Source of the DNA: Diadema antillarum
Lineage: Eukaryota
Assembly: GCF_040938485.1 (NCBI RefSeq)
Contig: NW_027271191.1
Coordinates: 186,001 to 250,000, forward strand
Reading direction: 5' to 3'
DNA: 64,000 nucleotides
Each line of letters opens with the position of its first letter. Position 1 is the stretch's first letter. Under the pieces are notes generated by a model. That model saw only the letters and a program-made list of their open reading frames with translations, was not told the origin of the DNA and made no database searches. Positions 30,972-33,894 of the stretch are shown here, in pieces. A program made the translations under genes and the position numbers.

Positions 30972-31003
<32 letters not shown>
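30972..31003. repeat. (TA)n microsatellite
   Basis: TA run; a second TA-rich tract lies at 31299-31362. Confidence 0.9.
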
Positions 31004-31008
<5 letters not shown>

Positions 31009-31124
31009 ATATGTATATGCATCAAAATATGAAAGTTCTGCGTCGGTGTGTAGTAAATAGATATCAAGAGTAAAATCAGTCGTATAAACACCGCAGGACT
31101 CAGCTGGAGCGAAAAAAAAAATGG

Positions 31125-31157
31125 ACTGACGTTTCGGTCAAAGACCTTTATCAAAGT
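31125..31157 (-). ncRNA. Minimal type I hammerhead ribozyme motif (minus-strand copy)
   Basis: Reverse complement reads ACT-TTGATAA-A-GGTC-TTT-GACC-GAAA-CGTC-AGT, identical to the plus copy. Confidence 0.6.
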
Positions 31158-31208
31158 AAGTCTGAACACAAACAATTTGATAGCATCAAATTGTTTGTGT
31201 CCAGACTT

Positions 31209-31241
31209 ACTTTGATAAAGGTCTTTGACCGAAACGTCAGT
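31209..31241 (+). ncRNA. Minimal type I hammerhead ribozyme motif (plus-strand copy)
   Basis: Stem I ACT/AGT, core UUGAUAA (CUGAUGA with U3-A8), stem II GGUC-UUU-GACC, GAAA, loopless palindromic stem III ACGU, predicted GUC cleavage after 31238. Confidence 0.6.
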
Positions 31242-31362
31242 CCATTTTTTTTTTTGGGCTTCTGCGGTGTTTATACGACTGATTTTACTCTTGATGTTGT
31301 ATATATGTATATATATATATATATAATATATGTACATACATATATTATATATACTACATATA

Positions 31363-32041
31363 TACACTGGACAGCAAAAGAAAGTACCCACTTCTGTCAA
31401 AGGCCGCACACAAAAATTCAACCGACTAGAAATAAACAATTTTTGTACACAGGTTTGCTACAATGCCCCTTACCCTAATCACATGCACATAAGCAAGTGA
31501 ATGTCTTCAACAAAGAGGAACTTGACATGCCCAGCATTGTTGGTCACTAAATCAAAAGTCCCACACAAAAGCACTTTCCACCACGCCTAAATGGCCACTG
31601 AATGGACAACACTTTAAACAACCAATATGTCAAAGTGAACACCTGTTTTGTCAAAATGATGTTAATGAGTGTATTCTGTATCTAAGGATGCTATCCTTCC
31701 TAATTATGCTAATTTCTCTTTAGACTGGACATTAATTTACTCTGGTCTAAGCAAGCTTTCATCAGGAAGATTATGCCACGTCTTGTAAGGCTTGTAAGGC
31801 TTGTAAACAAGGCTCATTCTGTTACATTTTGTGACTTTTGATTCAGTGACCAAGATGCTGTGCATGTCAAGTTCTTCATTGTTATGAAGACATTCACCTG
31901 CTTATGTGCATTGTGATTAGTAAGGGGCATTGTAGCACACTAGAGTCCTGTGTACAAAATTGTTTATTTCTATAGGGGTGAATTTTTGTGTTCGGCCTTT
32001 GACAGAAGTGGGTATACTTTCTTTTGCTGTCCATCAGTGTA
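31363..32041. mobile_element. Tc1/mariner-like MITE with long TIRs
   Basis: TA-CACTGGACAGCAAAAGAAAGTA ... TACTTTCTTTTGCTGTCCATCAGTG-TA; arms pair for over 150 bp. Confidence 0.85.
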
Positions 32042-32053
32042 TATTGGAGCTAA

Positions 32054-32194
32054 NNNNNNNNNNNNNNNNNNNNNNNNNNNNNNNNNNNNNNNNNNNNNNN
32101 NNNNNNNNNNNNNNNNNNNNNNNNNNNNNNNNNNNNNNNNNNNNNNNNNNNNNNNNNNNNNNNNNNNNNNNNNNNNNNNNNNNNNNNNNNNNNN
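32054..32194. other. Assembly gap
   Basis: 141 N bases. Confidence 1.
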
Positions 32195-33894
32195 AGAATG
32201 ATAATCCATCGTTCAATATGATTAAACCGTCTAAATGCTACCTCAGAATCTTAAAATAATGTCTTAGCTCTATATTTGCAGAAAACCCCATTCAATTCGG
32301 TGATATACAGCGGTCACAGAAAAATGTGGATTTTTGTAAAGCATGTCATGAGTCCAAGTTTAGCACTTGGGTGCTCTTGGAAATTGTGTGAACACAGTGG
32401 ACAGAACTTGGAGGGAAGAGACTTCTGACATGCATGCTCCACAAAAATAATATTGCTAATTTCTCCTTGACCAATGAAGCAAATCTTTTTATAATGGGGT
32501 CTACTGAAGATGTGGGCAATGAGTTACACAACTGTACAATGTAGTTTCATACCGTTAAATTGTATACTAGTATTGGATTGATTCACTATTTCAAAGAGCT
32601 CTAGATCGTTGCGGGAGATATCGTTGTAATCTTTTTGGGACATCGGTACAATATTATACTGGATGTACTTTACGTATAGCGTATACAGCAGCGATTAATC
32701 GATCTGTTGAATGTTTATAGACCTACAACTGCTTTTAATTACTTCAATATACACACTACTAATTTTGGTGACGTGGTTGATTGCATTATAAACACAAAAT
32801 AATAGGATAAACAACCACAAACTTATGATTATACCGCCATTTAGCCATTGCGATTATGATTATCATATTCTGTATAATCAACATTTTGTTCTGCTGCATA
32901 AACCAACAGATTACACAAACTACATAATCTTATGCTGTTACTTATAATTTTACTGTCGCTCCAGTGTACTGATACCTCAGTGACGTACGGTATAGGTACC
33001 AACTATAAGTTGTCTAACGTATAGAGCACAAACATGTAAGAATCAGTATTAGGGCCTATACGGTTAAAGTGATGGAACGTGCATGTAGTATCTTTGGACG
33101 ATTATACGGCGTTCACGACATTCATGCGAACCTTTATACATGTTAACATCTGACTTGAAAAATAGAAACGCTATAGAAAATAATTGATTTTTAAAATCCA
33201 ATACATAGTAATAGTAAGGGAGACTTTTAAGAGCATGTATAGCCCCATATTCAGAAGGAAGGCCAATAGCTGCTGAATTATTGACCGAAGACACAAAATC
33301 GTATCCAACTATACCAAACCTATTGATGTTGAGAGGACATCGTATAAATATAATCTCATTCATTAATGTGATTGCATCTAGACAGCCGCTGCTCAGTAAA
33401 AAAAAATAAATAAATAAATAAAATAAAAATACAAAATACAAAAATTCATATCTCATTCCCATTTTCATTCCAACACGTTTCGTATTTCATGCTCAATTTC
33501 AATAACCGCTTTCTTTTGTTGGGACATTAATTGATTTGCTCTGATAAATCAAAATCGGCCTAAACATGGAATAGATTGTGAGATTTTTCACGACGGAAAG
33601 CGTGGACTATAGATAGCATGCCCCGCTGGTAGACTGCACTCTTATAATATAACAGAGGAATACCTATAATAGGAGGTAACTCATGTAAGCCTAATTATCA
33701 CACAAGACATCTCCTTGGGGATACTCCCATCATCTGCCTCATGCATGCAATAAACGCAGATGTTGTGGCTCACTGGACATACAAGCAAGACCATTGCCTG
33801 ATATCAATCACGAGGTATATCCCTTGGTATATCTTCGGGTGGCATTTTACGTCGTCGGTCCCTTGGTTTCATGCTTATAGTTTATTCACATGGT

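What the first reader, a model, noticed from the sequence alone, without database searches (positions are those of the whole stretch)
31063..31295. Palindrome carrying two inverted minimal hammerhead ribozymes with a U3-A8 core
Seen: each arm holds ACT-TTGATAA-A-GGTC-TTT-GACC-GAAA-CGTC-AGT, which gives stem I, core, stem II, GAAA, a loopless ACGU stem III and a GUC site. Established: Penelope-like elements carry minimal type I hammerheads with palindromic stem III that cleave as dimers, and often leave inverted pLTRs. C3-G8 is a tertiary pair whose U3-A8 swap can retain activity. Inference: the double change from CUGAUGA to UUGAUAA is compensatory, not decay. Transcription in either direction yields one sense ribozyme plus its antisense in a ~115-bp hairpin, so folding could switch between self-cleavage and long dsRNA. 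It lies about 1.1 kb upstream of tubulin B and no RT ORF is visible, so it may be a pLTR remnant or a retrozyme-like unit.
Basis: partly seen in the sequence, partly recalled or inferred. Interest (0 to 1): 0.8.

Follow-up and report, generated by a model that had tools for sequence, protein, structure and literature searches.

The report
Dead Penelope stubs carrying hammerhead motifs
The palindrome is two mirror-image, truncated tail ends of a Penelope-like jumping gene inserted in a TA repeat, each carrying that element's minimal self-cutting (hammerhead) RNA motif: a real feature, but of a kind described since 2014.

Summary
Window 31063-31295 is a 233-bp near-perfect palindrome, and each arm carries the stated motif (31209-31241 on +, 31125-31157 on -).

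It is not a chance match. A structural descriptor gave 0 hits in 20 shuffles of 307 kb. The genome holds 228 copies of this motif within 3 mismatches, against 0 for the reversed-pattern control.

The arms are the last ~111 nt of a Penelope-like element (PLE). Four lines support this:
- Copies are head-to-head pairs with variable inner truncation points, or solo arms.
- One end carries a 42-nt "tail".
- Both ends abut (TA)n.
- Longer copies run upstream into a decayed RT/GIY-YIG ORF.

The U3-A8 core is a true compensatory variant. A second, intact PLE family has the same core with covarying stems I and II and a covarying helix III palindrome. Genome-wide, U3/A8 (3111 matches) and C3/G8 (5324) vastly exceed C3/A8 (493) and U3/G8 (401).

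All of this matches published minimal PLE hammerheads, including U3-A8, the extra base after A9 and inverted pairs. This copy is probably inert: stem I has only 3 bp, a transcript holds one sense ribozyme, and the -172 kcal/mol hairpin dominates. The ribozyme/dsRNA switch and retrozyme ideas are unsupported.

This scan has already reported several equivalent stubs elsewhere in this sea-urchin genome. Interest is low.

The parts
30970..31020 (.). Left (TA)n-rich microsatellite: the target tract into which the element inserted
   Evidence: repeat families D1/I3. Nearly all copies of this and of sister families abut (TA)n on both sides.
31021..31062 (-). [quoted passage not shown]
   Evidence: The same 42 nt follow the terminus ...CTCTTGAT at exactly one end of most copies. 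The family unit aligns to the window out to 31007. A 30-40-bp tail at one end is a published PLE hallmark (PMC8557442).
31063..31181 (-). Left arm: 5'-truncated 3'-terminal segment of the PLE, sense strand = window minus strand
31125..31157 (-). Minimal hammerhead motif (U3-A8 core) of the left arm; predicted cut between 31128 and 31127 on the minus strand
   Evidence: G000:C303:217125-217157:-.
31182..31184 (.). 3-nt junction between the two head-to-head truncated copies
   Evidence: The junction position differs from copy to copy in the family.
31185..31295 (+). Right arm: 5'-truncated 3'-terminal segment of the PLE, sense strand = window plus strand, ending at the element terminus ...CTCTTGAT
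31209..31241 (+). Minimal hammerhead motif. Stem I is 31209-11/31239-41; core U3..A9 is 31212-18; extra A is 31219; stem II is 31220-23/31227-30; G12-A14 is 31231-33; the palindromic helix III tetranucleotide ACGU is 31234-37; C17 is 31238; predicted cut is 31238/31239
31296..31353 (.). Right (TA)n-rich microsatellite flank

Best explanation
Window 31021-31295 is one dead insertion of a Penelope-like retrotransposon (PLE) into a (TA)n microsatellite. It consists only of two 5'-truncated copies (~111-119 nt each) of the element's 3' terminal region, joined head-to-head, plus the 42-nt tail that PLE integration leaves at one end. The two copies were most likely made in a single integration event (inferred: they share variants absent from the family consensus and are about 99% alike, while being about 88-90% like other copies). 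Each copy carries the element's minimal type I hammerhead, about 52 nt from the element's 3' terminus. That hammerhead has a U3-A8 core, an unpaired A between A9 and G10.1, a 4-bp helix II, no helix III of its own but the self-complementary ACGU, and a GUC site. In the parent element this motif is thought to pair with a second same-sense copy (tandem pLTRs) to form helix III and cut read-through transcripts to unit length. That role is taken from the literature and is not shown here. In this stub the motif is a relic. There is no ORF, and a transcript contains one sense and one antisense copy. The family's helix I has only 3 bp, and the whole unit folds into a ~115-bp hairpin. Self-cleavage at this locus is therefore unlikely, and no function for the neighbouring tubulin gene is indicated.
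For: (1) It is a repeat family. The arm has more than 100 scored matches in the genome, and the 33-nt motif has 228 matches against 0 for the control. (2) It has PLE insertion anatomy. Copies are head-to-head pairs with different inner truncation points, and solo arms also occur. A 42-nt tail sits at one end only, and (TA)n lies at both ends. These are the diagnostic PLE features listed in PMC8557442. (3) There is a link to a PLE ORF. In L055/L059 a minus-strand copy runs from a decayed C-terminal ORF with a GIY-YIG-type core through the 3'UTR. Its head-to-head partner, L055:1323-1790, overlaps that 3'UTR (97% over 77 nt) and continues to the hammerhead and the terminus. L060 adds an RT fragment. 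The ORF remnant aligns to an intact PLE ORF at 35% identity, E = 6e-31, and that ORF has RVT_1 followed by a C-terminal GIY-YIG. (4) Covariation between families. That intact family (F2) carries UUGAC-UUGACAA-A-GCCC-UAU-GGGC-GAA-AAUU-C/GUCAA at the same distance from its terminus. Across F1, F1b and F2, 7 of 9 stem pairs change on both sides and 92.6% of cells are paired, against 11-37% for slid controls. Helix III changes from ACGU to AAUU and stays palindromic. (5) Positions 3 and 8 covary. Genome-wide counts are U/A 3111 (control 444), C/G 5324 (control 170), C/A 493 (control 253) and U/G 401 (control 285). (6) Every motif feature matches the published min-HHR: the extra nucleotide between 9 and 10.1, G10.1-C11.1, palindromic 15.2-16.2, the U3-A8 variant, and opposite-strand pairs (PMC4209133).
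Against: No cleavage has been measured, and published PLE min-HHRs cut poorly in vitro even as dimers. This family's helix I has 3 bp. Its hammerhead fold (-4.0 kcal/mol) is less stable than an alternative fold (-6.6), whereas F2's MFE is the hammerhead fold itself. Helix II has 4 bp, against 6-8 bp in the Schistosoma and Drosophila virilis PLE min-HHRs described in PMC4209133. Rfam gives no hammerhead hit even at E up to 10. Only two loci (each on two haplotigs) keep ORF remnants of this family, and none shows an uninterrupted ORF-to-terminus copy, so the link rests on an overlap between two partners. Within the family, the 33 non-redundant copies show only single, mostly disruptive changes. 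That is expected for dead copies but gives no within-family covariation. No pLTR-type tandem was seen for this family.
Confidence: 0.9

Rival explanations
1. A MITE or foldback DNA transposon with ~110-bp terminal inverted repeats, in which the hammerhead-like string is a chance resemblance.
For: It is a short palindrome with TA-rich flanks and many genomic copies. This was my own first reading. Rfam shows no hammerhead, only sub-threshold miRNA-hairpin look-alikes.
Against: Inner junctions differ between copies and solo arms exist, so there is no fixed TIR plus internal sequence. The tail is at one end only. The arms continue upstream into an RT/GIY-YIG ORF remnant. The motif descriptor has 0 chance hits in shuffles. 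The motif covaries with sister PLE families.
Confidence: 0.03
2. A retrozyme-like non-autonomous unit that is transcribed, self-cleaves and circularises.
For: Animal retrozymes are proposed to be non-autonomous PLE derivatives (bioRxiv 10.64898/2026.07.22.740005). ORF-less copies far outnumber ORF-bearing ones. About 370 nt is the longest stretch shared by several ORF-less copies.
Against: Retrozymes are head-to-tail repeats with same-sense hammerheads. Here the copies are inverted, truncated at variable points, and never seen in tandem. No RNA run holding the stretch was found.
Confidence: 0.03
3. A functional RNA switch or regulatory hairpin upstream of beta-tubulin B: either a ribozyme/dsRNA toggle or a hairpin-RNA/miRNA gene.
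For: The hairpin is perfect and about 115 bp long. Generic matches to miRNA precursor models reach 68 bits (mir-559), below the gathering score of 95. The site lies 1.1 kb upstream of the tubulin ATG.
Against: The same architecture recurs at hundreds of unrelated loci and in other PLE families, so it reflects the insertion mechanism rather than locus-specific selection. The miRNA matches are structure-only and below threshold. There is no expression evidence.
Confidence: 0.04

Closest known systems
Minimal hammerhead ribozymes (min-HHR) of Penelope-like elements (Cervera & de la Pena 2014, PMC4209133)
   Same: It is type I. It has no helix III of its own but a palindromic 15.1-16.1 tetranucleotide for dimer formation. 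It has an unpaired nucleotide between A9 and G10.1, the G10.1-C11.1 pair and the GAAA box. It sits in the PLE terminal repeat region and occurs massively as single or opposite-strand paired motifs. A U3-A8 core variant is already reported (Schistosoma Cercyon).
   Different: Helix II has 4 bp with a 3-nt loop, against 7-8 bp in Schistosoma. Helix I in this family has only 3 bp (5 bp in sister copies). The host is an echinoderm, which the main text of that paper does not mention. Here U3-A8 cores make up about a third of all such motifs genome-wide.
PLE insertion structures (Arkhipova 2006; Craig et al. 2021, PMC8557442)
   Same: Strong 5' truncation, an inverted 5'-truncated copy head-to-head, a 30-40-bp tail at one end, and a (TA)n microsatellite target. 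[quoted passage not shown]
   Different: Both copies here are truncated to about 110 nt, so nothing but a palindrome remains. No tandem pLTR was seen for this family.
Animal non-LTR retrozymes (PMC7229834; bioRxiv 10.64898/2026.07.22.740005)
   Same: They are short, ORF-less, carry a hammerhead and are probably PLE-dependent.
   Different: Retrozymes are tandem direct repeats with canonical type I hammerheads that give circular RNAs. This is an inverted pair with minimal hammerheads and no RNA evidence.

Membership tests
PLE minimal hammerhead (min-HHR) | Catalytic boxes N3-UGANNA and GAAA with a Watson-Crick-compatible 3/8 pair (C-G, or the reported U-A) | tested here: met
   UUGAUAA ... GAAA at 31212-18 and 31231-34. 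The genome-wide 3/8 combinations strongly favour C/G and U/A.
PLE minimal hammerhead (min-HHR) | One unpaired nucleotide between A9 and G10.1, and a G10.1-C11.1 pair | tested here: met
   A at 31219, G at 31220 and C at 31230. The same holds in all six families compared.
PLE minimal hammerhead (min-HHR) | No own helix III; positions 15.1-16.1 form a self-complementary tetranucleotide allowing a dimer | tested here: met
   ACGU at 31234-37. Sister families have AAUU. In the matches listed the free dinucleotide is mostly AT, GC or CG, judged by eye rather than counted.
PLE minimal hammerhead (min-HHR) | Helices I and II supported by compensatory changes | tested here: met
   7 of 9 pairs change on both sides across F1, F1b and F2, with 0 of 500 shuffles reaching this value and slid controls giving 0-1. 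Caveat: there are only 3 sequences, and F1 itself pairs just 3 of the 5 helix I positions.
PLE minimal hammerhead (min-HHR) | Site-specific self-cleavage after H17 (as a dimer) | not testable with these tools
   No RNA run holds the stretch, and read laying returned nothing. The thermodynamics are unfavourable for this family.
Penelope-like element insertion | Parent encodes an RT followed by a C-terminal GIY-YIG endonuclease | tested here: met
   Decayed ORF remnants of this family are in L059/L060. [quoted passage not shown] The link from ORF to hammerhead rests on overlapping partner copies.
Penelope-like element insertion | 5' truncation, adjacent inverted 5'-truncated copy, 30-40-bp tail at one end, microsatellite target | tested here: met
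   with criteria from PMC8557442.
Penelope-like element insertion | Partial tandem copies forming pseudo-LTRs | tested here: not met
   Not seen for this family in 57 loci. It is seen for the sister family F2, which has same-strand ORF copies 3.3 kb apart on C546 and C1430.
Retrozyme | Head-to-tail repeats with same-sense hammerheads giving a circular RNA | tested here: not met
   Copies are inverted or solo. There is no RNA evidence.
MITE / foldback DNA transposon | Fixed terminal inverted repeats around a fixed core, with target-site duplication | tested here: not met
   Junctions vary, solo arms exist, the tail is one-sided and the arms continue into a retroelement ORF.
Rfam hammerhead families | Match to a curated hammerhead covariance model | tested here: not met
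   No hammerhead family was listed even at E up to 10. My explanation, which I did not test, is that the curated models were built from hammerheads that have their own helix III and a C3-G8 core.

The most novel reading that the evidence does not exclude
U3-A8 cores are not rare oddities in this echinoderm but a major, long-maintained lineage of PLE hammerheads, about 3100 against about 5300 canonical motifs in this apparently diploid assembly. The hundreds of head-to-head stubs such as this one could be transcribed into long perfect hairpins that feed siRNA/piRNA silencing of their own PLE families, giving the 'dead' palindromes a genome-defence role.
Probability: 0.1. Interest if true: 0.45.

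Novelty: new member of a known kind. Interest (0 to 1): 0.22.

Why it matters
It matters mainly for annotation. Such palindromes should be masked as PLE stubs rather than called miRNA hairpins, MITEs or new ribozyme switches. The genome-wide counts give a clean natural experiment on the hammerhead 3/8 tertiary pair: U-A and C-G are tolerated, while C-A and U-G appear only as decay products. They also point to an intact, apparently recently active sea-urchin PLE family (F2) in which the role of the minimal hammerhead could be tested experimentally.

Tried and rejected
- Rfam scan of 30500-31900 at E up to 10: no hammerhead hit, only sub-threshold miRNA hairpin look-alikes caused by the long stem.
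- MITE/foldback reading (my first guess): rejected after the alignments and the ORF link.
- Single-arm folding: the local hammerhead region is no more stable than shuffles (z = -0.2). This is uninformative for a dimer-type motif.
- Within-family covariation: 33 non-redundant copies show only single, mostly disruptive changes. That is neutral decay and cannot test the structure, so I turned to between-family comparison.
- Covariance model R1, built from three U3-A8 sequences: it recovered all F1/F2 copies and F3 (23 bits, E = 0.036), but not the C3-G8 families with longer helix II. The MAFFT alignment of six families (A1) was not structurally consistent, so I tabulated their pairs by script.
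After that I sent none of those letters to any search tool: the window, L001 and L002 were left out, and later patterns came from 31209-31241 or were generic.
- The genome search was busy.
- The masked N run at 32054-32194 was left alone.

Full report
**Observation**

Window 31063-31295 is a 233-bp palindrome. The arms are 31112-31181/31185-31254 (70 nt, 99% complementary, 3 nt apart) and 31063-31096/31262-31295 (34 nt, 100%). A small asymmetric patch lies between them. As RNA the whole stretch forms one hairpin of -172.1 kcal/mol, z = -30.

The element lies 1112 bp upstream of a beta-tubulin ATG at 29951 on the minus strand.

**Is it chance?**

No. I wrote a descriptor requiring:
- a core N3-UGANN8A;
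- an optional extra base;
- a G10.1-C11.1-closed helix II of at least 4 bp;
- GAAA;
- a self-complementary helix III insert between A15.1 and U16.1;
- H17;
- a helix I of at least 3 bp.

It found 0 hits in 20 Markov shuffles of the 307 kb in hand, against 62 real hits. Genome-wide, the 33-nt motif has 228 matches within 3 mismatches (53 exact) and 0 for the reversed-pattern control.

**What the palindrome is**

The arm is a dispersed repeat in this 1.75-Gb sea-urchin assembly. The window is G000:C303:186001-250000.

Alignments of copies show four things:
- Most copies are head-to-head inverted pairs whose inner junction lies at a different point in each copy. Some arms are solo.
- All arms end at the same outer terminus, ...CTCTTGAT.
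- At exactly one end of an insertion the terminus is followed by the same 42-nt extension. In the window this is 31021-31062.
- Both ends abut (TA)n.

A MITE would have fixed inverted repeats around a fixed core, so I dropped that first guess.

The four features are the published signature of Penelope-like element (PLE) insertions: strong 5' truncation, an adjacent inverted 5'-truncated copy, a 30-40-bp tail at one end, and a (TA)n bias (PMC8557442).

**Link to a PLE ORF**

Walking upstream along longer copies, the sense strand extends about 370 nt from the terminus in several copies.

In L055/L059 a minus-strand copy continues into a decayed ORF. Its C-terminal part reads as a GIY-YIG-type endonuclease with the cysteine motifs typical of PLEs, and it is interrupted by stops. 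Its head-to-head partner, L055:1323-1790, overlaps the 3'UTR of that copy (97% over 77 nt). The partner then runs without a break to the hammerhead and the terminus.

L060 keeps an RT fragment and 216 codons of the linker/endonuclease region. These align at 35% identity (E = 6e-31) to an intact ORF of a second family. That ORF has RVT_1 followed by a C-terminal GIY-YIG.

Only two loci, each on two haplotigs, retain ORF remnants of this family. The autonomous parent therefore appears extinct.

**Is the hammerhead real, and is U3-A8 compensatory?**

Within the family, 33 non-redundant copies differ only by single, mostly disruptive changes. This is neutral decay of dead copies and neither supports nor refutes the structure.

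The informative comparison is between families. The intact family F2 has frames still open over 707-709 codons in the loci held, and open frames of up to 979 aa in the search listing. About 50 nt from its own terminus, and with its own tail and (TA)n flanks, it carries UUGAC-UUGACAA-A-GCCC-UAU-GGGC-GAA-AAUU-C/GUCAA.

Compared with F1, F2 shows:
- the same U3...A8 core, extra A, G10.1-C11.1 pair and C17;
- two helix II pairs changed on both sides;
- the three helix I pairs that F1 forms changed on both sides in F2, whose helix I has two further pairs;
- a helix III tetranucleotide that changes from ACGU to AAUU and stays self-complementary.

On the three-sequence alignment of F1, F1b and F2, 7 of 9 pairs change on both sides and 92.6% of cells pair. 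Slid controls give 11-37% pairing and 0-1 covarying pairs.

Three more families found by chance in the fetched loci fit the same scheme. One has U3-A8 and two have canonical C3-G8.

Genome-wide pattern counts, with the reversed-pattern control in brackets:

| 3/8 combination | Matches | Control |
|---|---|---|
| U3/A8 | 3111 | 444 |
| C3/G8 | 5324 | 170 |
| C3/A8 | 493 | 253 |
| U3/G8 | 401 | 285 |

Many of the mismatched hits are visibly point mutants of C-G or U-A families. Many C3/A8 hits, for example, are CpG-to-CpA derivatives of one abundant C-G family.

It is also already published: PMC4209133 describes min-HHRs without helix III, the extra nucleotide between 9 and 10.1, the G10.1-C11.1 pair, palindromic 15.2-16.2, a U3-A8 variant with about 1300 hits in Schistosoma, and pairs of motifs 100-700 bp apart on opposite strands.

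**How it most likely works**

These steps are shown:
- the insertion anatomy;
- the derivation from a PLE;
- conservation and covariation of the motif between families.

These steps are inferred from the literature:
- the GIY-YIG endonuclease nicks (TA)n;
- reverse transcription primed at the target gives 5'-truncated copies and often an inverted partner;
- in tandem pLTRs two same-sense min-HHRs pair through helix III and trim read-through RNA to unit length.

For this locus I infer inactivity for four reasons:
- There is no ORF.
- Each transcript would hold one sense and one antisense motif, so no same-sense partner is at hand.
- F1's helix I has 3 bp, and its hammerhead fold (-4.0 kcal/mol) loses to an alternative fold (-6.6). 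F2's minimum-energy fold is the hammerhead itself at -10.5.
- The long hairpin dominates the fold.

The two arms share variants that the family consensus lacks and are about 99% alike, while being only about 88-90% like other copies. They therefore most likely came from one template in one event.

A 3.2-kb stretch that is 99.5% identical, on contig C662, carries the same palindrome. It is probably the other haplotype.

**What is not supported**

- The retrozyme alternative. It would need tandem direct repeats and circular RNA, and neither was seen.
- A ribozyme/dsRNA switch or a role for the tubulin gene. The same architecture recurs at many unrelated loci and in other families.
- The miRNA-family matches from Rfam, which are below threshold and reflect only the long stem.

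**Limits**

- No RNA evidence could be obtained. No RNA run holds the stretch.
I worked beside those places afterwards and sent none of their letters to search tools.
- Counts come from an apparently diploid assembly, so haploid numbers are about half.

**Comparison and verdict**

This is a genuine member of the known class of PLE minimal hammerheads, sitting in a known type of PLE insertion relic. Its only distinctions are the host phylum, a short helix II and a weak helix I.

Other notes of this scan reached the same reading for equivalent stubs elsewhere in this genome. I consulted them after my own analysis. Interest is low. Novelty: new member of a known kind.

Noticed in passing
L072:1162-3288 (-), also L067, L076; G000:C546:1786908-1792674 and C1430:478807-484611: A second PLE family (F2) looks recently active. 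Frames are still open over 707-709 codons within the loci held, and the search listing gives open frames of up to 979 aa. Its 3' ends are near-identical across more than 10 loci. Same-strand copies lie 3.3 kb apart with an inverted copy beside them, which is the classic pLTR-plus-inverted PLE array.
   Followed up: partly
L069:2700-2860: Another head-to-head palindrome in a (TA)n tract, from a different family. It carries a canonical C3-G8 min-HHR (AUCC-CUGAAGA-A-GAGGAA...UUCCUC-GAA-AAUU-C-GGAU) on each strand.
   Followed up: partly
L065:600-760: A short head-to-head structure of a third U3-A8 family (UUGAGAA core, 5-bp helix II with G-U/G-C variants, U17). This family dominates the first 100 genome-wide U3/A8 pattern hits.
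   Followed up: partly
G000:C54:2046598-2046664, C1130:774166-774232, C403:38304-38368: Several F1 pairs have their two motifs abutting within 0-1 nt, so both copies are truncated exactly at the 5' edge of helix I. The recurrence of this junction at separate loci is unexplained. Some of these loci may be haplotigs or duplications.
   Followed up: no
listing (e.g. G000:C11:962703-962733): Many of the listed C3/A8 'mismatch' hits are CTGACAAAG... copies of an abundant CTGACGAAG... family, i.e. CpG-to-CpA transitions at position 8. This is consistent with methylation-driven decay of dead copies.
   Followed up: no
window 31021-31062 versus L073/L076 tails: The one-sided tails of families F1 and F2 share a recognisable core (...CCGA-N-GCAGAA...). 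The tail is therefore a conserved part of these elements rather than random filler.
   Followed up: no
L001 (G000:C662:2340324-2343556) versus window 29563-32795: A 3.2-kb stretch that is 99.5% identical, in opposite orientation on another contig, carries the identical palindrome. Many other loci also come in near-identical pairs, so the 1.75-Gb assembly seems to contain both haplotypes.
   Followed up: partly
L017:2168-2210 (-) and C37 duplicates, C41:1892467: A sister copy type (F1b) has GGACU instead of UUACU before the core, giving a full 5-bp helix I with the same 3' strand AGUCC. F1's weak 3-bp helix I may therefore be a derived, degenerate state.
   Followed up: partly
window 32054-32194: A run of N (masked or gap) about 0.8 kb to the right of the element. 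It was left untouched.
   Followed up: no
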